The position numbers were made by a program, and so were the translations under genes. Below the pieces are notes generated by a model that saw only the letters and a list, made by a program, of their open reading frames with translations, was not told the DNA's origin and ran no database searches. From Takakia lepidozioides (taxonomy: Eukaryota > Plantae > Bryophyta), in contig CM060732.1 in the NCBI GenBank assembly GCA_030704615.1, positions 35,464,001 through 35,528,000 on the forward strand: 64,000 nucleotides of DNA, written 5' to 3'. Numbering within the stretch: position 1 is the first letter of the stretch; every line of letters starts with the position of its first letter. Shown here piece by piece: positions 10,849-63,817 of this stretch.

Positions 10849-10870
10849 AAAGAAATGAAAGACATGGGAC

Positions 10871-16300: not shown

Positions 16301-18243
16301 TAGTTCCTTTCAGCACTGTTCATCAACCTGCTAGCATAGTACACAGTGAATCTATATTTCCTGTAACATTCTGGGCTAACACCGCTCCCAACGCTTCTCC
16401 TGATGCATCGCAGTGAACTGAAATACTACATGCCAGTGAGGGTTAATCAACACAGGTGTAGTTGTTACTGACAGTGTAAGTTCCTCAAACGCCTGTTGAC
16501 ATTCAGCTGTCCAGGCAAACACTGCATCTTTCTTCAGAAGCTTGCTCAATGGTGCTGCTATTTGTGCATACCTTTTGACAAATCTTCTGTAATAACTGGT
16601 TTGCCCAAGGAATCTCCTTAGACTCTTAACATTCACTGGTGGTGGAGAGGCTTTCATGGCCTCTGTCTTCCTGGGATCCACAAGAAGTCCCTTCTTACAC
16701 ACAATGTGTCCCAGAAGCACCCCTGAGTTCACACAGAAAGTACACTTCTCTGGATTCAGGCCCAGACCTCTCATCCTGCATCTGGCCAGACATAACTCCA
16801 ATTTATGCAAGTGCTCATTCTTAGAGCTGTACACACTGAAATCATCCAAGAACACCTGCATGAAATCATCCAGATACTCATGAAAAGATTCACTTATTAC
16901 TCTCTGAAAGGTTGCTGGTGCATTACAAAGTCCAAAGGGCATGACTTTGTATGCATAAGCACCCCCAGTCTGTGATGAAAGCTGTCTTTCCTTGATCTTC
17001 TTCTGCCACTTGCACTTGATTATAACCACTGACCCATCCATGAATGAGTACATCTCATGGCCTGCCCAGTGTCCAATACTGCTTTGTGAATGGCAAGAAA
17101 ATGATCTTTCTTCGTACAAGCATTCAGCTTCTTGTAGTTCACACATACTCTTAGTTTACCATTCTTCTTGGGAACTATAACAATGGGTGACAACCAAGTT
17201 GTATACTCTATTGGGTATATAAACTTAGCCTCAGCCAACTTCTTGATCTCTTCTCCAACCTTCTGTGTGTAGTTGGGATTCATTCTGTACCTCGCCTGCT
17301 TGATTGGTGCTGACCCTGGTTCCAGTTCAATCTTATGCTGACAGATTTCAGGTGGTATCCCTTTTAGATCCTCATAGCTCCAAGCAAATAATACATCTCT
17401 GTATTTGATGAACAAACTCTTAGCTTCTTCAAAGAATTCTGGCTCCAAATCAGCTCCTACCTTCACCATCCTCGGTTCCTCTTTAGTTCCCACATTCACT
17501 TCCCTCACTTGCTCATCAGCAGTGATTGTCCAACCAGTCACCACTTCATCCTGTAAACTCACAGTGGCTGGTTCCTCTAGGATTTCCATTTCTCCTTCTT
17601 TTTCTTCATAGAAATGTGATGGGTAACTGCTGGTTTCCTCTCAGTTGGTGTTGCTGTCACTACACCACAGCAGATACCTCTTAAACAACTTAGGCTTTCC
17701 AGCCGCATCTCTGCAACCTGCTCCCCACTCTGGGTGTGCAGCAAATAGGGTAGCTTCATGCTCTCCTCATCCAGTCCTCCTTTCCAGTCATACTCTCTGA
17801 CTCCTCGAGGTCTTCTTGTAGCAGGTAATCTACTAGATTTCTTTGTGGTAATTTGTATCTCGTGTATCCCATTATGCACGGTTAGTAACTGAGAATTCCA
17901 GTCATGGAATACCCTGGCCTGCAGCCACGGACGTCCCAATAATAAGGAGTAAGCCTCCATGACTTCATCCATCTTCAACACAGTTACTGTGATCATAAAG
18001 ATCATTTTCTGTATCTGTATCTTAACTCCTCTTATTAATCCCAATGGCTGTACACTTCTTTGATCTGCCATTGTTACTGTAAATGGGGCTGTTCATGTTA
18101 CTTAGACCAAGCTTCTTTCTCAATTGGTCTGTCATGATATTTACTCCAGAACCTCCATCTATCAGTACATCAGTTAGTTCTGTGCTTCCAATTCTCAATT
18201 GGATTACTGGCATAGAATCATCAAAGTCCATGACTGTTTCTCG
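13311..18243 (-). pseudogene. pol: Inverted segment of element B: protease-RT-RNase H-integrase plus start of accessory ORF
   Basis: LIDGGSGVN, MPFGLCNAPATFQR, FLDD, GGHFG...[17 protein letters not shown] and GNGQAE all read on the minus strand between plus-strand flanks. Confidence 0.93.
14372..14593 (-). repeat. 10-bp CACAG-based / 30-bp higher-order tandem repeat after integrase (element B)
   Basis: (taggctgtga)-type 10-mers; same array as 27301-27525. Confidence 0.88.
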
Positions 18244-19709
18244 GGCTAAAGGAGGTAGATTGAACGTTCTGTTGCCATGAACAGAACCAACAGTACTTGA
18301 GCAGATCCTCATACTCAAAGCCCTGAGAGGAGAAGAGATAGAATGGGCGGACATAATGTACACGCCCTGGTAGAGGAAAAGATTTCAAAGTACTGCCGCA
18401 AAGTCTCCTATCATAGTGTCTGGCCCAATCATTGTTCTTGATTCTGGCATCCTTGATGCTCGAGAAAGAAAGGAGATGGGAGTGTTTGAGCCAGAAACCA
18501 CTGCAATGAAGAGCAAGGCTCTTCAGAGGGGGACTGGCAGGGCAACCCCAAACTAAGAGACTGGGGAAAGACTGTAGTGGCGGATCCACTGGCTGAATCC
18601 GCATGATACTGTTTCCCAAGCTCTTGTGCAGGAAGGGCACAACAACACAGAGAACTTCTATTATTGGAAGCGGACCTTCAGAGAGGGAAGAGGAAGTTAC
18701 TTCAGTATCACAGCCATCAAGCCAGATGATCGGCTTGTCACAAGTTACCACAAGTTGTTCATGCAGTTCCACTAGAAATAATTGATTTGGAAAGAAGGGT
18801 AAGATATTCCCTACAGAGGTGGTGGCAGAAATTGCCTTCTCTATGATATCTGGTCTGGTCAAGGAGACAGAGATTCCAGAGGTGCAACAGTTGCCCAAGG
18901 GAAATCTTGAGGTGTATATAATAGTCGGAGGTAGAATGTCAAGACACTGCAGCACCGGTGATGGATCAGAAGAAATCTGGTGGACAATGGCCTGATAGAC
19001 ATCACCTATTGTCAGGGAGAAGGAGAACATCACCATGATGACCCTCAACAGGCAATGCTTATGAATTCCATAGGCAGAACACTTAATTTGTTGGGACTTA
19101 TGTCAAATCCCATTTCCAACTACCCAATTGACAGCCTTGAGAGAGGAACTCAGGAAGGAGTTTGAGGCTCGACTCCACTGTGTGCAAACAAGTCGATGAA
19201 GAGGTCACTCTCAGATGCAGCAAGACTTGGAGAATACAGAAGCGGCTTTGCAATTGGCCACAATTGATTGAGGCAGGCCTCGCGCAAGACCAATTGGCAC
19301 AGCTATTGCAGTGAAGCATGAAAGGTTGCAAGAAGTGAATTCACTACATATTGCAGACAGCATGACATGATGGCCATACAATGTGCTACACTCACAACTG
19401 TTTTGACCAATCTACAAAAGAAAACAGTCAAGCGGAAAATGTATGAAGATAGAGGAGAGAATGTTGAGCAAATGAAACTCATTGTCGATATGAAATACAA
19501 TCTGTCGTAATGAGGATACTTTCAAGCAATACAGAAGATTGAAGCTGATCAAGAGAGGCACTCCTGGAGTTTTAGAAATGAAATTTCGTCGCTAACAAGG
19601 CTTGGAAGGAAGCCAATAACCTACTGGCTGCCTATGCGAATTTGGTTGACCTCATTGAGGCTTTACAACAGCAATTATGTACAAACTAAGCACACTCTCA
19701 GAGAACCAC
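18244..19709 (+). pseudogene. Heavily deleted middle of the accessory ORF of element B
   Basis: Colinear with 28588-30264 but has many small deletions. Confidence 0.82.
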
Positions 19710-21187: not shown

Positions 21188-21208
21188 AAGAAATGAAAGA
21201 CATGGGAC

Positions 21209-24200: not shown

Positions 24201-27160
24201 TGCGGCTGGAAAGCCTAAGTTGTTTGAGAGGTATCTGCTGTGGTGTAGTGACAGCAACACCAACTGAAGAGGAAACCAGCATTTACCCATCACATTTCTA
24301 TGAAAAGAAGAAGGAGAAATAGAAATCCTAGAAGAACCAGCCACTGTGAGCTTACAGGATGAAGTGGTGACTGGTTGGACAATCACAGCTGATGAGCAGG
24401 TGAGAGAAGTAAATGTGGGAACTAAAGAGGAACCGAGGATGGTGAAAGTAGGAGCTGATTTGGAGCCGGAATTCTTCGAAGAAGCTAAAAGCTTGTTCAT
24501 CAAATACAGAGATGTATTTGCTTGGAGCTATGAGGATCTAAAAGGGATACCACCTGAAGTCTGTCAGCATAAGATTGAACTGGAACCAGGGTCAGTACCA
24601 ATCAAGCAGGCGAGGTATAGAATGAATCCCAACTACGCACAGAAGGTTGGAGAAGAGATAAAGAAGTTGGCTGAGGCTAAGTTTATATACCCAATAGAGT
24701 ATACAACTTGGTTGTCACCCATTGTTATAGTTCCCAAGAAGAATGGCAAACTAAGAGTATGTGTGAACTATAAGAAGCTGAATGCTTGTACGAAGAAAGA
24801 TCCTTTCCCTTTGCCATTCACAGAAGCAGTATTAGACACTGTGGCAGGCCATGAGATGTACTCATTCATGGATGGCTTCAGTGGTTATAATCAAGTGCAA
24901 GTGGCAGAAGAAGACCAAGGGAAAACAGCTTTCATCACAGACTGGGGGGCTTATGCATACAAAGTCATGCCCTTTGGACTTTGTAATGCACCAGCGACCT
25001 TTCAGAGAGTGATAAGTGAATCTTTTCATGAGTATCTGGATGATTTCATGCAGGTTCTTGGATGATTTCAGTGTGTACAGCTCTAAGAATGAGCACTTGC
25101 ATAAATTGGAGTTATGTTTGGCCAGATGCAGGATGAGAGGTCTGGGCCTGAATCCAGAGAAGTGTACTTTCTGTGTGAACTCAGGGGTGCTTCTGGGACA
25201 CATTGTGTGTAAGAAGGGACTCCTTGTGGATCCCAGAAAGACAGAGTCCATTAAAGCCTCTCCACCACCAGTGAATGTTAAAAGTCTAAGGAGATTCCTT
25301 GGGCAAACCAGTTATTACAGAAGATTTGTCAAAAGGTATGCACAAATAGCAGCACCATTGAGCAAACTGAAGAAAGATGCAGTGTTTGCCTGGACAGCTG
25401 AATGTCAACAGGCGTTTGAGGAACTTACACTGTCAGTAACAACTACACCTGTGCTGATTAACCCTCACTGGCATGTAGTATTCATGTTCACTGCGATGCA
25501 TCAGGAGAAGCGTTGGGAGCGGTGTTAGCCCAGAATGTTACAGGAATATAGATTCACCTGTGTACTATGCTAGCCGGTTGATGAACAGTGCTGAAAGGAA
25601 CTAGCACAACGGAAAGAGAAGCATTGGCAATGATCTATGCAGTGAAGAAATTCAGGCATTACCTGTTGGGCAAGAAGTTTATGTTCTATGTGGATCACCA
25701 GGCTCTGATATACCTGGTAAACAAACCTCTGATAAGCGGAAGAATAGCAAGATGGTTGATAATCTTGCACGAGTTTGAGTTCGAGGTTGTTTACAAGCCT
25801 GGAGACTGCATCTTGTGGCGGATCATTTGTCACGACAACAGGAGAACCAGCCACAGGATAGATGATCAATTACCAGATGCGAGTCTTTGCAGTGGAGGTG
25901 CAGGGAAGTGCAGATGACTGGTTAGATTGGCAGTGGCCAATCAGATACTACCTTGCTCATGGTCAGTGCCCACCTAGTTATGGTAAGGAGCAGAGGAAGA
26001 GAATCGCTATCAAAGCTTTACCTTATACTATGGTAGGAAGCAGAATGTATAAGTTAGGACCTGATGGAGTACTAAAACGATGCTTGTACCACCATGAAGT
26101 AAATAAAGTTTTGGAGGAAGTTCAAAAGGAGTGGCTGGAGGTCATTTTGGAGAAGAGACTACCAGTAGAAAGATACTACTCGCAGGATACTGGTGGCCTA
26201 CTTTGTTCAAAGATGTACACGAGTATTGTCAGAAGTGTGATGAATGTCAGAGGCTAGGACCTTTGCAGAGATCTGGAAGGATGGCCTTGCATCCTACAAT
26301 GCCTACGGAACCATTTCAGAAATGGGGACTAGACTTTGTTGGACCAATTAACCACCATCCAAGAATACACGAAACAGGTACATAATTACAGCCACTGATT
26401 ATACTACAAAGTGGGTGGAAGCTAAAGCTTTGAGGGACAACACAGCCAAGTCCACAGCAAGGTTCCTGTACGAGAACATACTTACACGATTTGGCTGTCC
26501 CTTAGAATTTATCAGTGATCAAGGAAGTCACTTCATGAATGAGACCATTGAGTTGTTGACTAAAGAGTTATGATTGTGCATAGAAAGAGTACAACATATT
26601 ACCCACAGGGTAATGGGCAGGCAGAGGCTACCAACAAAATACTATGTACTATCTTGGCTAAGATAGTCAATGCAAACAGAACGGATTGGGATACAAAGCT
26701 GCTGACAGCTTTGTGGTCATACAGGACTTCATATAAAGTCACCACTAAGTATACACCATTCCAATTAGTTTATGGTATGGAAGCCTTACTTCCAGTGGAA
26801 TTCCTGTTACCTACCATGAGAACGGAGTGGGGAAAAGAATGGAATTGCAAGACTCCATCAAGGTCAGGAAACATGAATTATACCATGTGGAAGAAGTACG
26901 TGCTGATGCAGCTGATAATATGACCAGAATTCAGATGAAGCGAAAGGAACAGTTTGATGAAGGCAAGTTAAAGACTTTTAAGACGGGGGATTTGGTTCTA
27001 TGGTTGCAGAAGAAAGGAAAGATTCAAGCTTCTAAGCTTAAATCACCATGGAAAGGACCTTATGTCATACAAAAGATGTATGATAACAACACCGCCATGT
27101 TACAAACCATTAACAAAGAAATGCTGGGAAGAGTCAATGCAATAAGTTGAAGGGGTACAG
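21209..27160 (+). pseudogene. gag-pol: gag-pol of element A, frameshifted (PR ~23680-23990, RT ~24700-25250, RH ~25480-25800, IN ~26060-27160)
   Basis: Same motifs as copy B. RNase H motifs CDASG...TTEREALAMIYAVKKFRHYLLG...VDHQAL. No chromodomain and no second (archaeal-type) RNase H seen. Confidence 0.93.
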
Positions 27161-30100
27161 TGGTATCCATGACAAACCCTGCAGCATGATTTGCATGTTG
27201 AACCGCAAGAGCAGTCACGGGCTGCACCAGTGTTACGAACGGAGTATGGAGCACTTGTCGCTAGGCCCAGCATATATGACCAGGGTGGGCAAAACAAACG
27301 TGACACAGCCTATCACAGTAGCCTATCACAGCCATCACGACGTGACACAGCCTATCACAGCCCATCACAACGTGACACAGCCTATCACAGCCCAGCACGG
27401 CGCAACACAGCCTATCACAACCTACCACAGCGTGTCACAGCCTATCACAGCTTACCACAGTGCATCACAGCCTATCACAGCGTAACACAGTATGACACAG
27501 CCTGTCACAGCTCAACACAGCCTACTAAAGTTACACGATCCATAGAATCAGTGACAAGTGGACGCATAATAACTTCAGGAAAATGGCTGACGGAAGAGGA
27601 AACGGAAATTACTTTAAAAATAGACACGTGGAGGTCAGGGCGCGACACACAGCGAGAGGAAGTGCAAGAACAGGTGTCAAAAAGAAAGAGGACAAGAACG
27701 GCCGTCAAAAGGGATGAAAGGCGGGCCCATTAATGAATACGGAAAAAGGGAAACGGAACGAACGGGCAAGTACAGAAAAGCGAATTCTTGTCACATGTGT
27801 GATCCTAGTGGACTATCCAACAGGGAAAGTCCACTAAAGAAATAAAAATCTAAAATCCAGTCACAGCGGATACAGCCAATAGAAAACCAGAGAAAGGATC
27901 AAGAAAATGGAGGGAAATTGAGCGCAAGAGGCGGCGTCGTTCTGAGTAACGGGCGTCTCGACAGGACAGACCATCAATGCTATACTTGGAAACTATGGAG
28001 GAACTAACAGACTATACGCTCGCAATATTACTTACGCAGTGGCATAGACACGAAAGGACAGAGCGGAGCTTTTCTCTTGAGCGATGCTTGCAAGCCCCGC
28101 AGGCTTACAAGAAATTACCCATAGCTTTCTGCGGCAACCATACGTTTATGCTTTGTGCACTACAGGCATTCCTGCAGTTGTTACAGCCAAAACAGTTCTG
28201 TGAGTCTAAAATGAAGAGAGTGAGAGGAATGGAGGAAATCAGGGTGAAGAGCACCACAATTCTGCAGAAACAAACGATTGCTACCCCACAGGCGATACAG
28301 ATACTGGAGGAGCTGAGATTGCAAGGATTGCAAAGCCTAGATTGGACATTACACCATAGACAGTACATGTTACAATTTTTGCAGAACTTTGAGCCAAGGA
28401 CAGGAACAACAACGGTGAAGGGAGTTGAATTAATGATTACCCTATACCTCCAGCAATTGTTTCGATTGCCAGCAGGTCAGGTGCATGTGGAGGAAACACA
28501 GGGCAAGACTGCAAATAGGGGACTTATTCCAAGAAGGGAGTTTCTTTAAAACTCAGGGTTATGCTTGTACCAAGGCTGTGTACCCAGGGCTAAAAGAGGT
28601 AGGCCAGGTATTGAACGTTCTGATTGCCATGAAACAGAACCAACAGTATTTGAGCAGATCCTTCACGGAGGAAATACTCAAAGGCCTGAAGGGACAAGAG
28701 GTACAATGGGCGGACATAATGTACAACGCACTGGTAGAGGAGATGAAAAGATTACAAGGTACTACCGCAAAGTCTCCTATCATAGTGTCTGGCCCAATCA
28801 TTGCTCAAATAATCCTTGATTCTGGCATACTTGATGCGCAAGAAAGAAAGGAAATGGGAGTGTTTGAGCCAGAAACAACTGCAATGGAAGAGCAAGGCTC
28901 TTCACACAGTGAGGGTGGACTAGCAGGGCAACCCGAGACTAAGAGGCAGAGACGGGGAAAGACTGTAGTGGCGGATCCACTGGCTTCACGGATTCCGCAT
29001 GATAATGTTTCCCAAGCTCATGGCCAGGAAGGGGCACAGCAGCACAGAGAAATGCTATTACTGGAAGCAGGACCTTCAGAGAGGGAGGAGGAAGTTACTT
29101 CTGTATCACAACCATCACAGCCACTGACGACTTGTCACAAGGTCACAAGTTATCCATGCAGCTCAACCAGAAAAATAATTGATTTGGAAAGAGAAGGGTT
29201 AGATATTCCAACTACAGAACAGATAGTGGCAGAAAGAGAAGGGGGACCTTCTCTATGAATATTCTGGTCTGGTCAAGGAGACAGAAATCCCAGAGGTGCA
29301 ACAGTTGCCCAAGGGAAATCCTGAGGTGCATATAATACACACCTGTGTCGGAGGTACCACAGGCGGAAGGTCATGACACTGTAGCACCGGTGATAGATGA
29401 AGTAGTTCAGGAAGAAAATCCGGTGGGACAATGGCCTGAATGGTTCGTGAGACATCACACTGTTGAAGATCAGGAGGAACAGCAGCAACCTCACCATGAT
29501 GACCCTCAACAGGCAATGCTGATGAGTTCCATAGGCAGGACACTTAATTTGTTGGGGACTTATGTCAAATCCCATGTTCCAATTACCCAATTGACAGCCT
29601 TGAGAGAGGAACTCAGGAAGGAGTTTGAGGCTCGACTAGCCACTGAGTGTGCAAACAAGGTCGATGAAGAGGTCACTCTCAAGATGCAGCAGGACTTGGG
29701 AAATACAGAAATGGCTTTGCAATTGGCCAAGGAACAATTGATTGAGGCAGGCCTCGCGCAAGACCAGTTGCACGAAGCACATAAGCAACAGCTATACCAA
29801 ATGCAGGTGCAGCATGAAAGCAAGTTGCAAGAACTGAATGCACTACATACGGAGTTGCAGACAGTGCATAACAGGATGGCGATACAATGTGCTACATTCA
29901 CAACTATGCTTGACCAATCTACAAAAGAAATAAACAGTCAAGCGGAAAAATGTACGAAGGCAGAAGAAGAGAATGTTGAGCAAATGAAGCTCATTGTCGA
30001 TATGAAGAATACAATCTGTCGCAATGAAGATACTTTCAAGCAATACAGGCAGATTGAAGCTGATCAAGAGCACATCGTGGAGTTGCAACAAAATCATGGC

Positions 30101-31746
30101 CAATAGAAATGAAATCGCGGTCAATAACAAGGCTTGGAAGGAAGCCAATAATCTACTTGCTGCTATGCGCAATTGGTTGAACCTCAGGCGAAGCGCATGG
30201 AGGCTTTACAACAGCAGTTGGAATTGTACAAGCTAAGAGAGGAGCAAACTCTCAGGGGAACCACAAGCAACTTGGTGGATAACAGCCTTATGCAGGTCTG
30301 GTTAGCACAAGGGCCAGTAGAGGGCAAAGCACCACGGAAGCTCACCCAAAGCGAGATGAATGAGCTCAGGCTGCAGGTGCAGAACATTGCCACAACTACT
30401 ATAGACAATGTCTATAGTAGGATAGCAGAGTTACAAGAGGATGTAGACGGACTGCAGACTCAAGTGGAAGACCTCACTTCAAACATCGACCAAAGAGTCT
30501 ATATCCCTCAGGAACAGCTAATGGCTTCTTATTTACAAGCCAGAACTTTGGCTTTTCAGTCTTCACAGGAGGTGCAGGAGATGCCAATGATACAAGAGCC
30601 AGTACCACCACCACCACAACAAGTCACTGTACCAGTAGCTGAACCTGTGGTTACTACAACCACACCACAGCCACCACAGCCGGAGGTATGGGGCAATGCG
30701 CTTTTAACCCACCTAAAACTCCAGCTGCAAGGGAGTACAGTAGGGCTATGATTATGCCCTTCAACCAAATTCCCATCATGTTGGATTTGGCTTGGAAAGA
30801 ATTTAGTCCTCCGCAGTCATTCGCACACATTACTACCAAATCATGCGTATTTGGCTGCCAGTGGCAACTAGGACTAAAGTTCTTCCGAACAATCGACATA
30901 TTGAAGATCATCACTTTGCACAATACTGGCACGGCAGGTACCATGTTGAGGGAATTGATTGCTTTCCAGGTTGTACATGGACTCATTTATACCAAGACCA
31001 AGGAGTAGCAAGTATTGTCATGGGGTGCGGGTTATACTACGCTGCTTGTTTTCTGGTACGTTACCACATTGAGCAACAAAAGATGCAAACACGCTTTCTG
31101 AGTTATTCCAGTGGAGATCATTGGGTATTACCTTCGGTGCCACCTCATATGTACCTATATGACCCAAAAGTTATGATGCAAAAGGATTCTCAAATTCGTT
31201 CATGGTTTCAAGCGGCCTGGAACCATTTGTCAACACAGAAATTCGGCATTGATGACATTTTCTATAAGGGACATGTGGCATGGAAATACTTGCACGCTGC
31301 ACCAGTAATTGGTACCCCACTCACCTGGACAGACAAGGGAGCTCAGTGTCTACACCAATTTTGCTGTTCAGCGGTTACACCAAGTTGTAAAATACAAACT
31401 TCCAGACATGGTAGGACAGCATTGTATGCCCCAGATGATTCCACAAAAAGTTCGAAAATTAAAACACCTGAGAGGCGATGAGGATTCTGATACAACTGTT
31501 TCTTCACCGAATTCTTTTGACATGGGAGAAGACTATGCATTCAGATGGCAGAGAAGAAGCGACGGGGGTCTCCTATGCCGGAAAGGTTACCTCGATATCA
31601 GCCTCCAGAGGGCCTCACTTATCCAGGTAGTGATCAACCATCTCCGTCAACCAGAGACAGACCTCGGGCTCGTACACACAGTCCGCCACGAAACTCTCAA
31701 CGTCAAAAGGTGCTCACTCACAAAGGTTTGCTATCGAAATCAGTAA
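27161..31746 (+). pseudogene. Post-integrase accessory coding region of element A (~1,500 codons): TAYHS repeats, plant-transposon-protein-like domain, acidic linker, coiled coil, unknown C-terminal domain
   Basis: Overlapping ORFs from 27191 to 31746 that can be tiled with the other copies into one frame, ending ~20 nt before the PPT. Confidence 0.85.
27301..27525 (+). repeat. 10-bp/30-bp tandem repeat encoding TAYHSxxxxx (element A)
   Basis: cgtgacacag cctatcacag cccagcacgg ... regular 10-nt period, with cctatcacag as every third unit. Confidence 0.92.
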
Positions 31747-31766
31747 ACGTGAGGACACGGCTTTTT

Positions 31767-31779
31767 GAGGGGGAAGGGG
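31767..31779 (+). other. PPT of element A
   Basis: GAGGGGGAAGGGG then TAA|TGTTAG. Confidence 0.9.
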
Positions 31780-31782
31780 TAA

Positions 31783-32700
31783 TGTTAGAGGACTGTCGGG
31801 GACTTAGACACTTATACGGGATCTGTAGGGTACCTTAATTTTTGCACAGACTGAGACCAACAGGAGCCCTTAGGGGTGACAGCAGCGCACTGTAGAGGGG
31901 GTTACACAGCCGTCACAGTACACAGCCAACACAGCCCGTCACAGTCGTCACAGCCACAGCCAACACACACAGTCACAGCCCGTCACAGTCACAGCCACAC
32001 AGCCAGTCACAGCCCGACACAGCCAAACACACACAGCCAGTCACAGCCCGTCATTCACACAGCCAGTCACAGCTTGACACAGCTGTCACGATCATAGGGA
32101 ACGAAGAGTAGGACAGGGAACGACTGGCGGAACAACACCTGCGAAGGGAACATTTATGTCACAACACGTTAGTGAGGGAAACGGTTAGAACCGCGATAGA
32201 AGACAAAGGGAGAACGGGAATTAGGGACATCATTCGGAGGAGGACTTCTTGGTGATAGAGGAGAGGGATCGGGCAGAGATGAAGACGGAAGTGAAGATGA
32301 GAGATGATGAGTAGATGCTTGATATATGCAAGGCTGTAATGATATTGTAGAGTAGCTTAGAGACACAATGGCTTCGGCCTGATACCTGATAAATCATAAT
32401 CGGATACTTTTACGATACAATCACACTGTGTAGAGAGATCTGAGTGAAGCTGTGAATGAATGGATGATTTGATGGAATCCAATAGATTGATAAAGCAAAC
32501 TGATACTTAATTATCAATGGTAAGATAGTTAACATGAATACCAAAGGGAAACAAATAGGAAACACCCCCTGATATACTAGCTGTAGGTCATGACTGATTG
32601 TTCTGCGCGGGCGGGCTGAGTACTTAGAGATTTCCAACTCTTCATCTTGGAGTTTCCGCCTCAAATAGCGAAGGGATGGGTGAGTAAAAGCCGCGCGACA
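31783..32700 (+). repeat. 3' LTR of element A
   Basis: TG...CA, preceded by the PPT and followed by the TSD. Confidence 0.95.
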
Positions 32701-34189
32701 ACCACAAGCAACTTGGTGGATAACCAACTTATGCAGGTCTGGTTAGCACAAGGGCCAGTGGAGGGCAAAGCACCACGAAAGCTCACCCAAAGCGAGATGA
32801 ATGAGCTCAGACTGCAAGTGCAGAACATTGCCACAACTACTATAGACATTGTCTATAGTAGGATAGCGGAGTTACAGGAGGATGTAGACTTGCAGACTCA
32901 AGTGGAGGACCTCACTTCAAATATCGACAAAAGAGTCTATATACCTGTGGAACACTAATGGCTTTCGTATTACACATGCCAGAACTTTGGCTTTTCAGTC
33001 TTCTTCACAAGAGGTGCAGGAGATGCCAATGATACAGGAGCCAGTGCCACCAACACCACAACAAGTCACTGTGCAAGTAGCTGACCATGTTGTTACTACA
33101 ATCACACCACAGCCACCACAGTCTGAGGTATGGGGCAATGCTGCTTTTAACCCACCTAAAACTCCAGCTGCAAGGGAGTACAGTAGGGCTATGATTATGC
33201 CCTTCAACCAAATTCCCATCATGTTGGATTGGGCTTGGAAAGAATTTAGTCCTCCGCAGTCATTGGCACATTACTACCAAATCATGCGCATTTGGATACT
33301 AGTGGCAACAAGGACTAAAGTTTCTTCCCAAAATCGACCAATTGAGGCATCATCACTTTGCACAATACTGGCATGAGGCAGGTACAATGTTGAAGGAATT
33401 AATTGCCTTCCAAGTTGTACATGGATTCATTTATACCAAGACAAAGAGGTAGCAAGTATTTCATGGATGTGGGTTATACTACGCTGCTTGTGTTTCTAAT
33501 ACGTTCACATGGAGCAGCAAAAGATCAATCGCGCTTTCTGAGTTATTCCAGTGGGGATCATTGGTCTTACCTTCAGTGCCACCTCATATGTACCTATATG
33601 AGGCAAAAGTATGATGCAAAAGGATTCTCAAATTCGTTCATGGTTTCATGCGGCCTGGAACAATTTGTCAACACAGAAATTCGGCATATTGATGATATTT
33701 TCTATAAGGGACATGTGGCATGGAAATACTTGCAACAATTCACAAGTCATTGGTACCCCACTCACCTGGACAGACAAGGAACTCAGTGTCTTCACCAATT
33801 TTGCCGTTCAGCGTTTACAGCAAGTTTTAAAATATAAACTTCCAGACATGGTAGGACAACATTGTATGCCCCAGAGGATTCCACAAAAAGTTCGACAATT
33901 AAAACACCTGAGAGGCGATGAGGATTCTGATACAACTGTTTCTTCAGCGGATTCTTTTGACATGGGCGAAGACTATGCAATTCAGATGGCAGAGAAGAAG
34001 CGACGGGGGTCTCCTATGCCTGAAAGGTTACCTCGATATCAGCCTCCAGAGGGAATCACTTATCCGGGTAGTGTTCAATCATCTCCGTCAACCAGTGACA
34101 GACCTCGGGCTCGTACACACAGTCCGCCACGAAACTCTCAACGTCAGAAAGGTGCTCACTCACAAAGGTTTGCTAATCGCAATCAGTAA
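32701..34189 (+). pseudogene. 3' part of the accessory ORF of element B
   Basis: Resumes exactly at TTSNLVDN, where 19709 stopped. Confidence 0.9.
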
Positions 34190-34226
34190 ACCGTGAGGAC
34201 ACGGCTTTTTGAGAGGGAAGGGGTAA

Positions 34227-35196: not shown

Positions 35197-38100
35197 AACC
35201 ACTTCATCCATCACCGGTGCTGCAATGTCTTGACATTCTACCTGTGGTACCTCCGACACAGGTGTGTGTATTATATGCACCTCAGGATTTCCCTTGGGCA
35301 ACTGTTGCACCTCTGGAATCTCTGTCTCCTTGACCAAACCAGAATATTCATAGAGAAGGTCTCCCTTCTCAATTTCTGCCACTATCTGTTCTGTAGTTGG
35401 AATGTCTAACCCTTCTTTTTCCAAATCAATTATTTCTGGTTGAGCTGCATGGACAACTTGTGATAACCTTGTGACAAGCCGATCATCTGGCTGTGATGGC
35501 TGTGATACTGAAGTAACTTCCTCTTCCCTCTCTGAAGGTCCTGCTTCTAGTAATAGCAGTTCTCTGTGCTGCTGTGCCCCTTCCTGCACAAAAACTTGGG
35601 AAACATTATCATGCGGATTTCGTGAAGCTAGTGGATCCGCCACTACAGTCTTTCCCCGCCTCTGTCTCTTATTCTCGGGTTGCCCTGCTAGTCCACCCTC
35701 ACTGTGTGAAGAGCCTTGCTCTTCCATTGCAGTGGTTTCTGGCTCAAACACTCCCATCTCCTTTCTTTCTCGAGCATCAAGGATGCCAGAATCAAGAATT
35801 ATTTGAGCAATGATTGGGCCAGACACTATGATAGGAGACTTTGCGGCAGTACCCTGTAATCTTTTCATTTCCTCTACCAGTGCGTTGTACATTATGTCCG
35901 CCCATTCTACCTCTTCTCCTCTCAGGGCTTTGAGTATTTCCTCTGTGAAGGATCGGCTCAAATACTGTTGGTTCTATTTCATGGCAAACAGAACGTTCAA
36001 TACCTGGCCTACCTCCTTTAGCCCTGGGTACACGGCCTTGGTACAAGCATAACCTTGAGTTTTAAAGAAACTCCCTTCTTGGAATAAGTCCCCTATTTGC
36101 AGTCTTGCCCTGTGCTCCTCCACATGCACCTGACCTGCTGGCAATTGAAACAATTGCTGTAGGTATAGGGGAGTAATTACTAATTCAACTCCCTTCACCG
36201 TTGTTGCTCCTGTTCTTGGCTCAAAATTCTGCAAGAATTGTAACATGTACTGTCTATGGTGTAATGTCTAATCTTTGCTTTGCAATCCTTGTAATCTCAG
36301 CTCCTTCAGTAACTGTATCGCCTGTGGAGTAGCAATCGTTTGTTTCTGCAGGATTGTGGTGCTCTTCACCCTGATTTCCTCCATTCCTCTTACTCTCTTC
36401 ATTCTAGACCCACATAAATGTTTTGGCTGTAACAATTGAAGAAATGCCTGTAGTGCACAAAGCACAAACGTATGGTTGCCACAAAAAGCTATGGGTAATT
36501 TCTTGTAAGCCTGCGGGGCTTGCAAGCATCGCTCAAGAGAAAAGATCCGTTCTGTTCTTTTGTCCCTATGCCACTGCGTAAGTAGTATTGCGAGTGTATA
36601 GTCTGTTAGTTCCTCCATAGCTTCAAAGCTATCGCATTGATGGTTTGTCCCGTCGAGACGCCCGTTACTTAGAACGACGCCGACTCTTGCGCTTAATTTC
36701 CCTCCAATTTCTTGATCCCTTCTCTGGCTTTCTATTGGCTGTAACCGCTGTGACTGGATTTTAGATTTAATTTTCTTTAGTGGACTTTCCCTGCTGGACT
36801 GTCCACTAGGATCACACATGTGACAAGAATTTTGCTTTTCTGTACTTGCCGTTTGTTCCGTTGCCCTTTTTCCGTATTCATTAATGGGCCCGCCATTCAT
36901 CCGAATTGACGCGCTAAGTAGGTACTTTGACGGCCATTCTTGTCCTCTTTCTTGATGACACCTGTTCTTGCACTTCGTTCTCAGCTGTGCGTCGTGCCCT
37001 GATTTCCACGTGTCTATTTTTAAACTAGCTTCCGTCCTTTCTTCCGCCGGCCATTTCCCTGAAGTTATCCTGCGTCCACCTGTCACTGATTCTATGGATT
37101 GTGTAACCCTAGTAGGCTGTGTTGAGCTGTGACAGGCTGTGTCATATTGTGGTACGCTGTGATAGGCTGTGATGCACTGTGGTAAACTGTGATAGGCTGT
37201 GACACGCTGTGGTAGGTTGTGATAGGCTGTGTTGCGCCGTGCTGGGCTGTGATATGCTGTGTCGCGCCGTGCTGGGCTGTGATAGGTTGTGTTTCGCCTT
37301 GATAGGCTGTGATAGGCTGTGTCACGCTTGTTCTGCCCGCCCTGGTCATATATGCTCGGCCTAGCGACAAGTGCTCCATACTCCGTTGGTAACACTGGCG
37401 CAGCCCGTGACTGCTTCTGCGTTTCAACATGCAAATCATGCTGCAATGGTTTGTCATGGATACCACTGTATCCCTTCAACTTATTGGCATTGACTCTTCC
37501 CAGCATTTCTTTGTTAATGGTTTGTAACATGGCGGTGTTGTTATCATACATCTTTTGTATGACATAAGGTCCTTTCCATGGTGATTTAAGCTTAGAAACT
37601 TTAATCTTTCCCTTCTTCTGCAACCATAGAACCAAATCTCCCGTCTTAAAAGTTTTTAACTTGTCTTCATCAAACTGTTCTTTCCTCTTCATCTGAATTC
37701 TGGTCATATTATCAGCTGCATCAGCACGTACTTCTTCCACATGGTATAATTCATGTTTCCTGACCTTAATGGAATCTTGCAATTCCATTCTCTTTCCCCA
37801 TTCCGTTCTCATGGTAGGTAACAGGAATTCCACTGGAAGTAAGGCTTCCATACCATAAACTAATTGGAATGGTGTATACTTAGTGGTGACTTTATATGAA
37901 GTCCTGTATGACCACAAAGCTGTCAACAGCTTTGTATCCCAATCCGTTCTGTTTGCATTGACTATCTTAGCCAAGATAGTACATAGTATTTTGTTGGTAG
38001 CCTCTGCCTGTCCATTACCCTGTGGGTAATATGTTGTACTCTTCCTATGCACAATCATGAATTCTTTAGTCAATAATCAATGGTCTCATTAATGAAGTGA

Positions 38101-46140: not shown

Positions 46141-46446
46141 GGGGGTAGTAATGTGACGGCACGGTGCCGGCTTCTCCCCTTCAGCCGTCATCTCCGGACG
46201 GCCCCCCACTTTCTGACTGGCATACCGTTGGCAGTTATTGCGCAAAGACCAGGGGCCCGCATTCCGGAGACAAGGTTCATTAATACCTGGACTCTGACTC
46301 TGATTTTTTGAGATAGTTGGCTCCCTGGATTTGGATCAGGCTTTGTCGCTGGACAAATCGGCACCGCATTCCTTCCCATCGCTGCATCCCCCTTCTACAG
46401 GGAGCTTCCCCCCACGCCATCCTGGCAGTCTTGTGTGCCATCTCCC

Positions 46447-56750: not shown

Positions 56751-57232
56751 TATGGATTGTGTAACCCTAGTAGGCTGTGTTGAGCTATGACAGGCTGTGT
56801 CATACTGTGGTACGCCGTGATACGCTGTGTTGCACTGCGGTAAGCTGTGATAGGCTGTGACACGCTGTAGTAAGCTGTGATAGGCTGTATTGCTCTGTGC
56901 TGGGCTGTGATAGGCTGTGTCGCTCTGGTCATATATGCTCGGCTTAGCGACAAGTGCTCCATACTCCGTTGGTATCACTGGTGCAGCCCGTGACTGCTTT
57001 TGCGTTTCAACATGCAATTCATGCTGCAATGGTTTGTCATGGATACCACTGTACTCTTTCAACTTATTGGCATTGACTCTTCCCAGCATCTCTTTGTTAA
57101 TGGTTTGTAACATGACGGTGTTGTTATCATATATCTTTCGTATGACATAAGGTCCTTTCCATGGTGATTTAAGCTTAGAAGCTTTAATCTTTCCTTTCTT
57201 CTGCAACCATAGAACCAAATCTCCCGTCTTAA
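56751..57232 (-). pseudogene. Inverted integrase C-terminus + TAYHS repeat of element D
   Basis: KTGDLVLW...WKGPY...NKLKEYSGIHDK...TAYHS reads on the minus strand and continues the plus-strand IN. Confidence 0.9.
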
Positions 57233-62473: not shown

Positions 62474-62520
<47 letters not shown>

Positions 62521-62694
62521 GCCATTTTTCTAGTTCGGGGCCGAAAACGGCTAAGTCCCAGATCTGACTGGCACCAAAATCGGAAATTCGGCGCCATTTT
62601 TCCATTCATGCAGGTAATTCGAAGAGCGGATGGATGGAAATCCGGCGCCGGATTTCCATCCATCCGCGCTCCGAATTACCTGCATGATGGAAAT
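60955..62694. repeat. Second copy of the nested-palindrome array (opposite orientation)
   Basis: Same 30-bp palindrome and hairpin modules; poly-A loop at 62474-62519. Confidence 0.9.
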
Positions 62695-63817
62695 TAACAG
62701 TCAAGCGGAAAGATGTACGAAGGCAGAGGCAGAAAATGTTGAGCAAGTGAAACTCATTGTCGATATGAAGAATACAATCTGTCGCAATGAGGATACTTTC
62801 AAGCAATATAGGCAGGTTGAAGCTGACCAAGAGAGGCACATCCTGGAGTTACAACAAACGGTCATGGCCAATAGAAATGAAATCTCTGTCGCTAACAAGG
62901 CTCGGAAGGAAGCCAATAATCTGCTTGTTGCCTATGCGAATTTGGTTGAACCTCATGCGAAACGCATGGAGGGTTTACAACAGTAGTTGGATATGTACAA
63001 ACTCAGAGAGGAGCAGACTCTCAGAAGTACCACAAGCAACTTGGTGGATAACCACCTTATGCAGGTCTGGTTAGCACAAGGGCCAGTGGAGGGCAAAGCA
63101 CCACGAAAGCTCACCCAAAGCGAGATGAATGAGCTCAGACTGCAAGTGCAGAACATTGCATTTGGTATAGCTGTTGCTTATGTGCTTCGTGCAACTGGTC
63201 TTGCGCGAGGCCTGCCTCAATCAATTGTTCCTTGGCCAATTGCAAAGCCGTTTCTGTACTCTCCAAGTCTTGCTGCATCTTGAGAGTTACCTCTTCATCG
63301 ACCTTGTTTGCACACTCAGTGGCTAGTCGAGCCTCAAACTCCTTCCTGAGTTCTTCTCTCAAAGCTGTCAATTGGATAGTTGGAACATGTGATTTGACAT
63401 AAGTCCCCAACAAATTAAGTGTCCTGCTTATGGAACTCATAAGCATGGCCTGTTGAGGGTCATCATGGTGAGCTTGCTGCTGTTCTCCCTGATCCTCAAT
63501 AGTGTGATGCCTCACGAACCACTCAGGCCATTGTCCCACCAGATTTTCTTCCTGAATCACTTCATCTGTCACCGGTGCTGCAGTGTCTTGACATTCTACC
63601 TGTGGTACCTCCGGCACAGGTGTGTGTATTATATGCACCGCATGGTTTCCCTTGGACAACTGTTGCACCTCTGGAATCACTGTCTCCTTGACCAGACCAG
63701 AATATTCATAGAGAAGGTCCCCCTTCTCAATTTCTGCCACCACCTGTTCTGTAGTGGGAATATCTAACCCTTCTTTCTCCAAATCAATTATTTCTGGTGG
63801 AACTGCATGGACAAGTT
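62695..63817. pseudogene. Two opposed fragments of the gypsy accessory ORF (62695-63159 plus, 63160-63817 minus)
   Basis: Match ~29930-30390 and ~29145-29805 respectively. Confidence 0.87.

What the first reader, a model, noticed from the sequence alone, without database searches (positions are those of the whole stretch)
35197..38073. Integrase has no stop codon: gypsy Gag-Pol fused to a ~1,500-aa accessory extension (predicted ~3,500-aa polyprotein)
Seen: in copy C one 601-aa ORF runs from the IN core through the GPY motif, the TAYHS repeats and a ~170-aa linker into MEELTDY. The same frame continues to 35197 with only two point stops (TGG>TAG, CAG>TAG) that are sense codons in other copies. 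Copy D (56751-57232) independently reads IN into the repeats in frame, and copy B agrees with C across the linker-MEELTD junction. Overlapping ORFs from copies A-D and the 62695-63817 fragments tile to a stop ~20 nt before the PPT. Gag also tiles into PR without a frameshift (A spans 21209-31746). Known: Athila/Tat extra 3' ORFs are normally separate from pol. Inference: the accessory protein is made as part of the polyprotein, either protease-released or tethered to IN as a targeting or packaging module.
Basis: partly seen in the sequence, partly recalled or inferred. Interest (0 to 1): 0.85.

Follow-up and report, generated by a model that had tools for sequence, protein, structure and literature searches.

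The report
Integrase fused to PMD-like accessory protein
A very abundant giant gypsy-type jumping gene in this bryophyte genome has no stop codon after its integrase, so about 1,500 further codons, which seed-plant relatives keep as a separate "extra" gene, are read as part of the same polyprotein.

Summary
In copy C the 601-aa ORF (36268-38073, minus) is exact. The same frame runs 985 codons with two internal stops, against 54 and 61 in the other frames.

Comparing copies A, B, C, the inverted D fragment, T (32700-34189), Z (532-2202) and the 62690-63817 fragments, every stop and frameshift between the integrase and the terminal stop is private to one copy. That stop (A 31744-31746) lies 20 nt before the polypurine tract. 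Z reads 554 codons with no stop.

Substitutions between copies show purifying selection in the integrase frame throughout (dN/dS 0.05-0.5). The exception is a 150-codon basic linker (0.5-0.9), which is still open.

Ordinary Tat-type relatives end pol 2-4 residues after the GPY/F module. Two other divergent families read on as this one does. The closest integrase relatives (L003/L004) carry the homologous domain as a separate downstream ORF (BLASTP E=1e-8).

The extension is: repeat and basic linker, a probably PMD-like domain, an acidic stretch, a long helical region, and an unknown C-terminal domain. It resembles the known "PMD-coiled-coil" extra ORFs of seed-plant Tat/Ogre elements, here fused to integrase.

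This is a new variant of a known kind. Translation, processing and splicing remain untested.

The parts
37462..38073 (-). Copy C: C-terminal part of the integrase core plus the GPY/F module (SPWKGPYVIQK ... NANKLKGY). Relatives end pol 2-4 residues after the equivalent of about 37455.
   Evidence: dN/dS 0.05 between A and C in this frame
37330..37461 (-). Copy C: read-on segment directly after the canonical pol end. It has no stop in C, B or the D fragment. A has two private 1-nt deletions here.
   Evidence: other genomic copies carry the base that A lacks at 27139/27140; dN/dS 0.13-0.28
37113..37328 (-). Copy C: 30-nt tandem repeats encoding about 8 (R/Q)xxTAYHS decapeptides. Repeat number varies between copies.
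   Evidence: the D fragment differs by 75 nt and stays in frame; dN/dS 0.17-0.37
36640..37099 (-). Copy C: basic, probably disordered linker of 153 codons. It is open in C and rich in indels in A and B.
   Evidence: dN/dS 0.49-0.90; 0 stops in this frame against about 11-12 in each other frame; all indels are private
36271..36639 (-). Copy C: 'MEELTDY...' region, the start of the structured part of the extension.
   Evidence: dN/dS 0.26-0.48
36268..36270 (-). Private TAG stop of copy C (TGG, Trp, in A and B).
35760..36267 (-). Copy C: core of the post-integrase globular domain (probably PMD-like), broken by a private TAG at 35974-35976 (CAG in A).
   Evidence: dN/dS 0.12-0.38; BLASTP E=1e-8 to the separate ORF of L003; protein-language-model feature hits to Transposase_32 (0.91) and ATHILA ORF-1 (0.89); hhalign to the P0008 domain family E=0.0025
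35197..35759 (-). Copy C: acidic, low-complexity stretch. The copy is truncated at 35197, which equals A 29407.
   Evidence: dN/dS 0.24-0.44
26570..27160 (+). Copy A: integrase C-terminal part, with private frameshifts.
27161..29520 (+). Copy A: repeats, linker, MEELTD region, PMD-like domain (27995-28895) and acidic stretch. It is homologous to C 37461-35197 and carries many private 1-2-nt indels.
29520..30560 (+). Copy A: long E/Q/L-rich helical, coiled-coil-like region of about 340 codons in the integrase-linked frame.
   Evidence: dN/dS 0.12-0.37 in most pairs (0.62 for A-Z over 55 codons; about 1 for the close T-Z pair), off frames about 1 or more; P+G 1.7%, weak heptad signal z 1.2-2.0
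30560..31743 (+). Copy A: Pro-rich spacer and an unknown C-terminal domain (dom3) with a hydrophobic segment (VASIVMGCGLYYAACFLV) and a basic tail.
   Evidence: no Pfam or sequence homologue found
31744..31746 (+). Terminal TAA of the long frame in copy A (equals T 34187-34189 and Z 532-534).
31767..31779 (+). Polypurine tract GAGGGGGAAGGGG, 20 nt after the stop. The 3' LTR starts with TG at 31783.
31783..32700 (+). 3' LTR of copy A (about 920 bp). The 5' LTR remnant is 19709-20600, followed by a candidate PBS TGGCGACCATACTGGGG at 20603-20619.
32700..34189 (+). Copy T: tandem partial copy of the last about 1.5 kb of the extension, followed by its LTR (34227-35196).
532..2202 (-). Copy Z: 3' part of the extension. 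It reads 554 codons in the integrase-linked frame with no stop once its 2 private indels are read as X.
56775..57232 (-). Inverted fragment at the end of copy D: an independent, more diverged copy of the IN-to-repeats junction, in frame with no stop.
13311..15400 (-). Copy B (inverted part): IN end, linker, MEELTD region and the first half of the domain. All its frameshifts are private.
18243..19709 (+). Copy B2: diverged copy (80-88% identical) of the second half of the domain, the acidic stretch and the helical region.
62690..63817 (.). Two fragments joined head to head at about 63158 (F1 on the minus strand, F2 on the plus strand), covering A 29147-29805 and 29927-30390.

Best explanation
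The window is a nest of decayed copies of one very abundant, roughly 13-kb Ty3/gypsy LTR retrotransposon. It belongs to the Tat/Athila side of the family, has no chromodomain and shows no extra RNase H. The host is a bryophyte according to earlier notes of this scan.

Shown: in the functional ancestor of these copies, pol had no stop after the integrase GPY/F module. The Gag-Pol frame ran on for about 1,530 codons to a TAA 20 nt before the polypurine tract.

The extension is modular:
- a decapeptide-repeat and basic linker;
- a globular domain that is probably of the PMD / Transposase_32 / ATHILA-ORF1 fold;
- an acidic stretch;
- a helical (coiled-coil-like) region of about 340 residues;
- a Pro-rich spacer;
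- an unknown C-terminal domain.

Inferred: every ribosome that completes Pol also makes the extension, so the accessory module is produced in step with integrase. It then either stays tethered to integrase through the flexible linker or is cut off by the element's protease.

Inferred: the module is the counterpart of the 'PMD-coiled-coil' extra-ORF proteins of seed-plant Tat/Ogre elements. It most likely acts on chromatin or DNA, either in choosing integration sites or in countering host silencing.
For: 1. Open frame. C has 985 codons with 2 internal stops, against 54 and 61 in the other frames. Shuffles give a mean of 43 and never fewer than 24.

2. Private lesions only. All indels between IN and C 36031 are private to A or B. 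C's two stops are sense codons in the other copies.

3. The 3' half. The IN-linked frame runs to the terminal stop with at most one stop per copy, none of them shared. Z has none in 554 codons.

4. Selection in the IN frame. A-C dN/dS values are: IN 0.05, post-IN 0.13, repeats 0.17, MEELTD 0.26, domain 0.14-0.21 and acidic 0.24. The other two frames give about 0.8-5. Outside the linker, 65 of 115 substitutions fall on third codon positions. In most pairs the helical region gives 0.12-0.37 (0.62 for A-Z over 55 codons) and dom3 0.23-0.52. The closely related T-Z pair gives about 1 in the helical region, the Pro-rich spacer and the tail.

5. Other genomic copies restore A's lesions. In independent runs, copies carry the bases that A lacks, for example at 27139/27140, giving GCC AAT AAG (N-A-N-K). 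The family laid 56,228 contigs in one run.

6. Ordinary relatives stop. Pinus, Victoria and Arabidopsis Tat-type proteins end 2-4 residues after the motif where this family reads on.

7. The same layout occurs elsewhere. P0008/L001, L002 and L005 read IN, basic linker, domain, acidic stretch and then about 600 aa of helix, ending about 100 nt before the 3' LTR and in pol's frame in L002. In L127, IN reads on through the linker with one in-frame stop, and the domain follows in another frame.

8. Fold of the relatives' domain. It models at pLDDT 86 and matches PMD, Transposase_32, ATHILA ORF-1 and DUF1985 clusters at TM 0.61-0.72.

9. Identity of the window's domain. It hits Transposase_32 and ATHILA clusters by language-model features. 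It is homologous to the separate 3' ORF of L003 (E=1e-8).

10. Literature. PMD and PMD-CC extra ORFs are described in Tat elements (PMC4408406, PMC6317226).
Against: - No copy in the window is intact. Continuity is inferred by parsimony from 3-4 decayed copies per region.
- At A ~30932/30997 the ancestral state rests on three copies.
- The 153-codon linker evolves almost neutrally (dN/dS 0.5-0.9).
- There is no RNA or protein evidence. The one possible RNA run gave only short, partly matching contigs.
- The PMD-like assignment of the window's own domain is weak at sequence level. Pfam finds nothing. hhalign gives E=0.0025 over 27 columns. The single-sequence model has pLDDT 56.
- The coiled coil is judged from composition and a weak heptad signal only.
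Confidence: 0.72

Rival explanations
1. The extension is an accessory gene expressed mainly from a spliced subgenomic RNA, as the env-like ORFs of Athila/Bagy-2 elements are. Its being in frame with pol would then be tolerated rather than used.
For: Extra 3' ORFs of this clade are normally separate genes (PMC4408406). The closest IN relatives (L003/L004) have the homologous domain as a separate ORF with its own ATG, 1.7 kb after the pol stop. The linker before the domain is almost unconstrained.
Against: With no stop after IN, unspliced genomic RNA must still yield the fusion. The post-IN segment and the repeats, which lie upstream of any plausible acceptor, are under purifying selection in the IN frame (dN/dS 0.13-0.17). 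The linker keeps an open frame of 153 codons while the other frames have about 11-12 stops each. No RNA joint was seen, but the data could not show one.
Confidence: 0.15
2. The missing stop is a defect carried by a non-autonomous subfamily that is copied in trans. The downstream sequence would then be a relic with no role as part of the polyprotein.
For: All copies seen are broken. Huge families often descend from defective masters. The linker's dN/dS is near 1.
Against: Purifying selection in the IN frame extends over about 1,300 codons, including between subfamilies 80-93% identical. The same IN-read-on layout occurs in at least two other families that share only about 40% IN identity and come from other samples.
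Confidence: 0.07
3. The extension is an envelope-like protein (helical heptad region plus a membrane anchor), as proposed for Athila-type 'plant retroviruses'.
For: There is a long helical region followed by one hydrophobic 19-mer with Kyte-Doolittle mean 1.69 (EVASIVMGCGLYYAACFLV). The ATHILA family appears among the fold and feature hits.
Against: A fusion has no place for a signal peptide. There is only one marginal hydrophobic segment, and it sits inside a region that looks globular. The first domain resembles PMD-like nuclear or TE proteins, not a surface subunit. The heptad signal is weak.
Confidence: 0.04
4. The ORF is a chance product or an assembly artefact.
For: The window is full of inverted junctions between copies.
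Against: The frame statistics, agreement among 4-7 copies, independent sequencing runs from 5 studies that hold the sequence, and the codon-position bias of substitutions.
Confidence: 0.01

Closest known systems
Extra-ORF (eORF) proteins of Tat-lineage Ty3/gypsy elements: PMD, PMD-coiled-coil (Ogre ORF1; Retand-type antisense ORF) and Tr28-coiled-coil (Ustyantsev et al. 2015, PMC4408406; Steinbauerova et al. 2011 as cited there; Neumann et al. 2019, PMC6317226)
   Same: An accessory module on a Tat/Athila-side gypsy element, built as a PMD-type domain followed by a long helical or coiled-coil region. Its function is unknown. The relatives' domain matches PMD, Transposase_32 and ATHILA ORF-1 folds.
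   Different: There, the module is a separate ORF, either 5' of gag in sense or 3' in antisense. Here it is in sense, 3' of pol, and in the same frame as integrase with no stop. The 2015 survey reported no eORF in moss Tat-like elements or in lineages I and II, and dated the capture to gymnosperms. No Pfam PMD match is seen at sequence level. An extra unknown C-terminal domain is also present.
The P0005 family (loci L003/L004, ENA assemblies), the closest integrase relatives found (41-42% identity)
   Same: The same IN type. Pol also reads about 150 residues past the GPY/F module. The family carries a homologue of the window's post-IN domain (BLASTP E=1e-8).
   Different: Pol stops at L003 6609. 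About 1.7 kb with stops in all frames follows, and the domain sits in a separate ORF with its own ATG (L003 8328-9518). No long helical region follows it.
The P0008 family (L001, L002, L005; ENA ERZ26858887) and the P0071 family (L127, Logan SRR7121612)
   Same: In L001 and L005, IN reads on without a stop into a basic linker, a globular domain and an acidic stretch. In the P0008 family a helical region of about 600 aa follows and ends about 100 nt before the 3' LTR. The order of modules is the same as in the window.
   Different: Outside IN, sequence similarity to the window's extension is only marginal (hhalign E=0.0025). These families have no TAYHS repeats and no dom3. In L127, IN reads on only into the linker (with one in-frame stop) and the domain lies in another frame. 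The L001/L002/L005 contigs are low-coverage assemblies with frameshifts.
'Post-integrase' extra RNase H (aRNH) structure of moss and lycophyte Tat elements (PMC13468544)
   Same: An added domain lies downstream of integrase in a non-seed-plant Tat element. Whether it is part of pol or a separate ORF is debated in the literature.
   Different: That domain is an RNase H. None is detectable here. The same paper describes liverwort Tat ('Z2') as lacking aRNH.
Chromovirus integrase-chromodomain fusion
   Same: A chromatin-reading module is fused to the C-terminus of a gypsy integrase and is thought to guide integration.
   Different: The chromodomain is about 50 residues and follows directly after the GPY/F module. 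Here the extension is about 1,530 residues with several modules, and there is no Chromo match.
Athila env-like 3' ORF and the Pfam ATHILA ORF-1 family (PF03078)
   Same: A large extra coding region lies 3' of pol in the sister lineage. ATHILA ORF-1 clusters are among the fold and feature matches.
   Different: Those are separate ORFs. There is no Pfam-level match, and no clear transmembrane or signal features.

Membership tests
Ty3/gypsy (Metaviridae) LTR retrotransposon | Domain order gag(CA, CCHC) - PR - RT - RNase H - IN in one orientation | tested here: met
   Pfam finds Retrotrans_gag, Ty3_capsid and zf-CCHC, and RVT_1, RT_RNaseH and Integrase_H2C2. The IN core matches rve-bearing proteins. 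Gag capsid to IN lies in one frame.
Ty3/gypsy (Metaviridae) LTR retrotransposon | Flanking LTRs (TG...CA) with a PBS after the 5' LTR and a PPT before the 3' LTR | tested here: met
   Self-comparison gives LTR boundaries at 19709-20600 and 31783-32700. The LTR ends in ...CA at 20600 and is followed by TGGCGACC.... The PPT is at 31767-31779, then TG at 31783. Target-site duplications were not examined because the copies are nested or truncated.
Tat lineage (sensu Ustyantsev 2015; aRNH-bearing) | An additional archaeal-type RNase H (Pfam RVT_3 / RNase_H) in or beside pol | tested here: not met
   No RVT_3 or RNase_H hit in any scanned piece of the element, including the extension and the two ORFs upstream of the capsid. 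This fits the aRNH-less 'Tat Z' / Tat-like elements of bryophytes (PMC13468544, PMC4408406).
Tat/Athila (OTA) clade | RT/IN phylogenetic placement with Tat/Athila, and no chromodomain | tested here: inconclusive
   The best named IN hits are Pinus, Victoria and Arabidopsis proteins, many of which carry RVT_3, at 33-37% identity. There is no Chromo hit. No tree against a labelled reference set (REXdb) could be built here.
Plant mobile domain superfamily (Pfam PMD PF10536; Transposase_32 PF20167; ATHILA ORF-1 PF03078; DUF1985) | Sequence match to one of the Pfam models above its threshold | tested here: not met
   hmmscan finds nothing for the window pieces, the P0008 family or L003.
Plant mobile domain superfamily (fold level) | The same fold as PMD-type domains | tested here: inconclusive
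   Met for the relatives' domain: P0008 residues 361-560 model at pLDDT 86 and match PMD, Transposase_32, ATHILA and DUF1985 clusters at TM 0.61-0.72. For the window's own domain the evidence is indirect only. Language-model features score 0.91 for Transposase_32 and 0.89 for ATHILA. hhalign gives E=0.0025. A pLDDT-56 model has the same order of helices and strands. No intact copy was available to fold.
PMD-coiled-coil eORF of Tat elements | A PMD-type domain followed by a coiled coil in one protein | tested here: inconclusive
   The order of modules fits. The relative P0073 is a 499-aa domain-plus-helix protein. The coiled coil was judged only from composition and weak 3.5-residue periodicity (z 1.2-2.4). 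No dedicated predictor was available.
PMD-coiled-coil eORF of Tat elements | Encoded as a separate ORF (5' sense or 3' antisense) | tested here: not met
   Here it is in sense, 3' of pol, in the same frame, with no intervening stop in the inferred ancestor.
Env-like ORF of Athila-type elements | Signal peptide and transmembrane anchor; separate, spliced ORF | tested here: not met
   There is one marginal hydrophobic 19-mer (Kyte-Doolittle 1.69) in dom3 and one inside the globular domain. There is no N-terminal signal because the region is fused. Splicing is not testable with these data.
Programmed -1 ribosomal frameshift site | A shared frame change with a slippery heptamer in the overlap | tested here: not met
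   The apparent frame change at A 30935-31005 disappears when Z's base at ~30997 is kept. A and T have different 1-nt deletions there, and there is no X XXY YYZ heptamer.

The most novel reading that the evidence does not exclude
The enigmatic PMD-coiled-coil accessory proteins of plant Tat/Ogre/Athila retrotransposons began as, or repeatedly pass through, a C-terminal extension of integrase. On this reading they may also be the ultimate source of the host PMD silencing factors of the MAIN/MAIL1 type. In bryophyte lineages the module would still be translated as part of Gag-Pol and delivered into the particle tethered to integrase. There it would steer integration or shield new copies from silencing. 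The separate 5' or antisense extra ORFs of seed plants would be later break-away versions.
Probability: 0.3. Interest if true: 0.75.

Novelty: new variant of a known kind. Interest (0 to 1): 0.55.

Why it matters
Extra ORFs of plant gypsy elements (PMD, PMD-CC, Tr28-CC) are widespread, conserved and functionally unexplained. The published survey dated their capture to gymnosperms and found none in moss Tat-like elements (PMC4408406).

This family and two others from non-overlapping samples carry a probably homologous module fused to integrase. A sister family has it split off as a separate ORF. Together they push the origin back to non-seed plants.

They also give a direct physical hint about function, because the module travels with integrase. 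That makes the question testable: is the module in particles, is it cleaved, and does it bind DNA or chromatin?

The case is also a caution for annotation. Pipelines that expect pol to end at the GPY/F module will truncate such elements or call the extension a host gene.

Tried and rejected
1. Pfam scans of all extension pieces, of the relatives and of the A2 alignment found no family.

2. Word-indexed protein searches with the 601-aa ORF found IN matches only. Searches with dom3 and with the domain piece found nothing.

3. Pairwise BLASTP of P0008's extension against window pieces was not significant. An HMM of the P0008 domain family against the six-frame window gave only E of about 1-2, though at the same motif in three copies.

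4. A tiled alignment of broken pieces (A1) was mis-aligned by MAFFT and was abandoned.

5. I first read the last 250 codons as lying in a -1 frame and looked for a slippery site or an intron. I rejected this: it was an artefact of the majority rule at a site where A and T have different deletions.

6. A 17-mer scan of metagenome contigs, meant to collect more copies across that site, returned only chance matches. A single blastn of A 30500-31800 against the fetched loci found nothing. Some of those loci are labelled as gut metagenomes. I took none of them for human and did nothing further with them.

7. RNA evidence: no listed holder is on record as RNA. The one guessed RNA run gave 10 short, partly matching contigs, which says nothing either way.

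8. The single-sequence AlphaFold model of the window's domain piece had pLDDT 56 and is usable only for the order of secondary structure.

9. Foldseek against the PDB with the P0008 model found no match.

10. No family consensus was built. The question was answered copy by copy, with X at each break.
Full report
WHAT IS IN THE WINDOW

Self-comparison shows a nest of decayed copies of one LTR retrotransposon family.

- Copy A (+ strand) has a truncated 5' LTR at 19709-20600, an internal region 20601-31782 and a 3' LTR at 31783-32700.
- A tandem partial copy T (32700-34226) follows A, with its own LTR at 34227-35196.
- Copy C (- strand, 41590 down to 35197) corresponds to A 23067-29407 and is truncated at 35197.
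- Copy B is split by an inversion (9395-13310 on +, 13311-18243 inverted). A more diverged piece, B2 (18243-19709), follows it.
- Copy D is 51830-56752, with an inverted, more diverged fragment at 56775-57232.
- Z (1-2202, - strand) and F (62690-63817) cover the 3' part.

Pfam finds gag (Retrotrans_gag, Ty3_capsid, CCHC), RT, RNase H and the integrase zinc domain in the usual gypsy order. The LTR ends in ...CA at 20600 and is followed by TGGCGACC.... The polypurine tract GAGGGGGAAGGGG lies at 31767-31779, just before TG at 31783. Earlier notes of this scan describe the genome as a bryophyte. I did not test that.

CHECKING THE OBSERVATION

The 601-aa ORF at 36268..38073 (-) is exact. It contains the integrase core end, SPWKGPYVIQK, the TAYHS decapeptide repeats (a 30-nt tandem array at 37113-37328), a basic linker and MEELTDY.

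The same frame runs on to 35119, giving 985 codons with 3 stops against 54 and 61 in the other frames. Shuffles of the post-integrase part give 43 stops on average and never fewer than 24. Two of the stops are the TAG codons at 36268-36270 and 35974-35976. They read Trp and Gln in copies A, B and B2. The third lies beyond the truncation point.

ARE THE BREAKS PRIVATE?

I aligned the copies and listed every indel. Between the integrase and C 36031, each of about 25 indels is present in A only or in B only, and none is shared against C. C's own ORF start at 38073 is due to a private 1-nt deletion at 38078.

The inverted D fragment is an independent copy, only 84-86% identical. On its minus strand it reads from KTGDLVLW through GPY and NANKLKEY into the repeats without a stop.

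Contigs of independent sequencing runs laid on copy A show that many other genomic copies carry the bases A lacks. At 27139/27140, for example, they restore ...GCC AAT AAG TTG AAG GGA TAC. They also show that the family is enormous, with 56,228 contigs laid in one run.

THE 3' HALF

I defined columns by the majority gap pattern and read each copy on its own, with X at its breaks.

The integrase-linked frame continues from A 29100 through an E/Q/L-rich helical region, a Pro-rich spacer and a last domain. At first the final ~250 codons appeared to lie in the -1 frame, and I looked for a slippery site. Direct reading of Z and T showed this was an artefact. At A ~30997, Z has AAGGAGGTAG, A has AAGGAG-TAG and T has AAG-AGGTAG. 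So A and T carry different single-G deletions, and Z's state is the most parsimonious ancestor.

With that column kept, the frame is unbroken to the TAA at A 31744-31746 (T 34187-34189, Z 532-534). Stops in that frame number A 1, T 1, B2 1, F2 1, and F1, C and Z 0, and none is shared. Z reads 554 codons with no stop.

SELECTION

Pairwise Nei-Gojobori counts in the integrase frame (A against C) are:

| Region | dN/dS |
|---|---|
| Integrase | 0.05 |
| Read-on segment | 0.13 |
| Repeats | 0.17 |
| MEELTD region | 0.26 |
| Globular domain | 0.14-0.21 |
| Acidic stretch | 0.24 |

The other two frames give about 0.8-5. Outside the linker, 65 of 115 substitutions fall on third codon positions. The 153-codon basic linker is the exception (0.49-0.90) and is rich in private indels. 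It is nevertheless open in C, while the other frames have about 11-12 stops each.

In the 3' half, most copy pairs give 0.12-0.37 for the helical region (0.62 for A-Z over 55 codons) and 0.23-0.52 for the last domain, always in the integrase-linked frame. The closely related T-Z pair gives about 1 in the helical region, the Pro-rich spacer and the tail.

It is half met: the linker is nearly neutral. No frame-breaking indel is fixed, however.

UPSTREAM

From about A 21843, the capsid, protease, RT, RNase H and integrase lie in one frame, with 6 private stops over about 1,780 codons times roughly four copies. This holds if seven 1-nt tie columns are read as base present.

The acidic ORF at A 21209-22020 (B 10871-11815) ends at a stop shared by A, B and E. 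It lies in another frame than gag in A and E, and only B joins them, through a private +1. The polyprotein is therefore about 3,240 aa from the first Gag Met. It reaches about 3,500 aa only if that ORF is joined. The extension itself is about 1,530 codons.

RELATIVES

The 601-aa ORF finds only integrase matches of about 40% identity or less. Pinus taeda, Victoria cruziana and Arabidopsis Tat-type proteins end 2-4 residues after the position aligned to NANKLKGY. That is where pol normally stops.

Three kinds of closer relatives differ from this.

(i) The P0008 family (L001, L002, L005, one ENA assembly). In L001 and L005 the integrase reads straight on into a basic linker, a globular domain and an acidic stretch. 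In L001 and L002 about 600 residues of helix follow, ending about 100 nt before the 3' LTR. In L002 the helix ORF is in the same frame as pol.

(ii) The P0071 family (L127, a Logan contig). Integrase reads on into the linker with one in-frame stop, and the domain follows in another frame.

(iii) The P0005 family (L003/L004), the closest integrase relatives. Pol continues about 150 residues and then stops. About 1.7 kb with stops in all frames follows, then a separate ORF with its own ATG (L003 8328-9518). The second half of that ORF matches the window's post-integrase domain (BLASTP E=1e-8, 29% identity over 96 residues).

Both fused and separate arrangements therefore exist among near relatives. 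P0073, in a chromosome-level NCBI assembly (L126), is a stand-alone domain-plus-helix protein of 499 aa.

WHAT THE EXTENSION IS

Pfam and sequence searches leave it unnamed.

An exhaustive search with the P0008 domain found 76 relatives. With their alignment, AlphaFold gives a confident model (pLDDT 86, pTM 0.85). Its best fold matches in the ESM Atlas (TM 0.61-0.72) are clusters carrying PMD, Transposase_32, ATHILA ORF-1, DUF1985 and Peptidase_C48-linked proteins. There is no PDB match.

For the window's own domain the evidence is indirect:
- Language-model features place it with Transposase_32 (0.91, 11 hits) and ATHILA (0.89) clusters.
- hhalign of the L003-plus-window alignment against the P0008 family gives E=0.0025 over 27 columns, at the conserved G-x-x-[IV]-x-W helix.
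- A low-confidence single-sequence model has helices and strands in the same order as the C-terminal half of the P0008 model.

I put the PMD-like reading at about 65%. The helical region has 1.7% Pro+Gly and only a weak heptad signal. The last domain is unknown and has one marginal hydrophobic segment.

COMPARISON WITH THE LITERATURE

Ustyantsev et al. 2015 (PMC4408406) describe the extra ORFs of Tat elements as PMD, PMD-coiled-coil or Tr28-coiled-coil proteins. These are encoded separately, either 5' in sense or 3' in antisense. The authors found none in moss Tat-like elements or in lineages I and II, and inferred a later capture.

Neumann et al. [quoted passage not shown]

A 2026 survey (PMC13468544) describes liverwort Tat elements without the extra RNase H. 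It also describes a 'post-integrase' RNase H in mosses, whose status as part of pol or a separate ORF is debated.

Ikeda et al. 2017 (PMC5418596) link gypsy-borne PMDs to the host silencing factors MAIN and MAIL1.

Against this background the module's kind is known, and its in-frame fusion to integrase in non-seed-plant elements is the new part.

HOW IT MOST LIKELY WORKS

Shown: no terminator after integrase, one frame to the end, and purifying selection in that frame.

Inferred:
- The module is made with Pol on genomic RNA and so enters particles in step with integrase.
- The weakly constrained basic and repeat linker is a flexible tether or holds a protease site.
- The PMD-like domain and the helical region act on DNA or chromatin, either to place new copies or to counter silencing.

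A spliced RNA that also expresses the module alone is not excluded.

LIMITS

- No intact copy was seen.
- Ancestral continuity rests on 3-7 decayed copies per region.
- There are no RNA or protein data.
- Lineage placement is by best hits only.

Noticed in passing
window 10871-11815 (copy B), A 21209-22020, E about 50200-49400 (-): An acidic ORF of about 270-314 codons lies between the PBS and the capsid domain. It ends at a stop shared by A, B and E. In A and E it lies in another frame than gag (gag is -1 relative to it, with about 125 nt of overlap). Only copy B joins them, through a private +1. It has no Pfam match. It could be an upstream extra ORF of the Ogre-ORF1 kind or an N-terminal Gag part reached by frameshifting.
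   Followed up: partly
window 13310/13311, 18243, 35197, 51830, 56752, about 63158: Copies of the same family are repeatedly joined head to head or tail to tail at sharp inverted junctions. At 51830, for example, a minus-strand copy equal to A 19709-23087 abuts a plus-strand copy that starts at A 22088. I did not examine whether these are real rearrangements or long-read assembly artefacts.
   Followed up: no
window 42400-45500 and 61700-62700; 45629-47535 against 61464-59567: Blocks of tandem or satellite-like repeats, and a GC-rich (53%) segment, are present twice in inverted orientation. They flank the region between copies C and D and the region near 60-62 kb.
   Followed up: no
L003 2208-5280; proteins P0002, P0009: In the P0005 family the integrase is preceded by four to five tandem copies of an H2C2 zinc-binding-like module (repeated '...YWWPT...C..C...' units of about 130 aa; DNA repeats spaced about 1,240 nt apart). 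This is an unusual multiplication of the integrase N-terminal domain.
   Followed up: partly
L126 8001-9500 (NCBI GCA_014529385.2, CM043965.1): P0073 is a 499-aa protein with the P0008-type PMD-like domain followed by a helical region. It is annotated as a gene, and no pol is recognisable within 3.5 kb upstream. It could be a solo extra ORF or a domesticated copy.
   Followed up: partly
L002 4532-4990; L001 283-692: A 51-nt tandem repeat array (6-7 copies) lies upstream of the protease region in the P0008 family. It parallels the 30-nt coding repeats of the window family but sits at a different place in the element.
   Followed up: no
window A 30932 and 30997: Copy A has a -2 and a -1 deletion 65 nt apart. 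Together they keep the frame but misread 22 codons. This compensated pair makes A look 'fused' in a different way from Z.
   Followed up: yes
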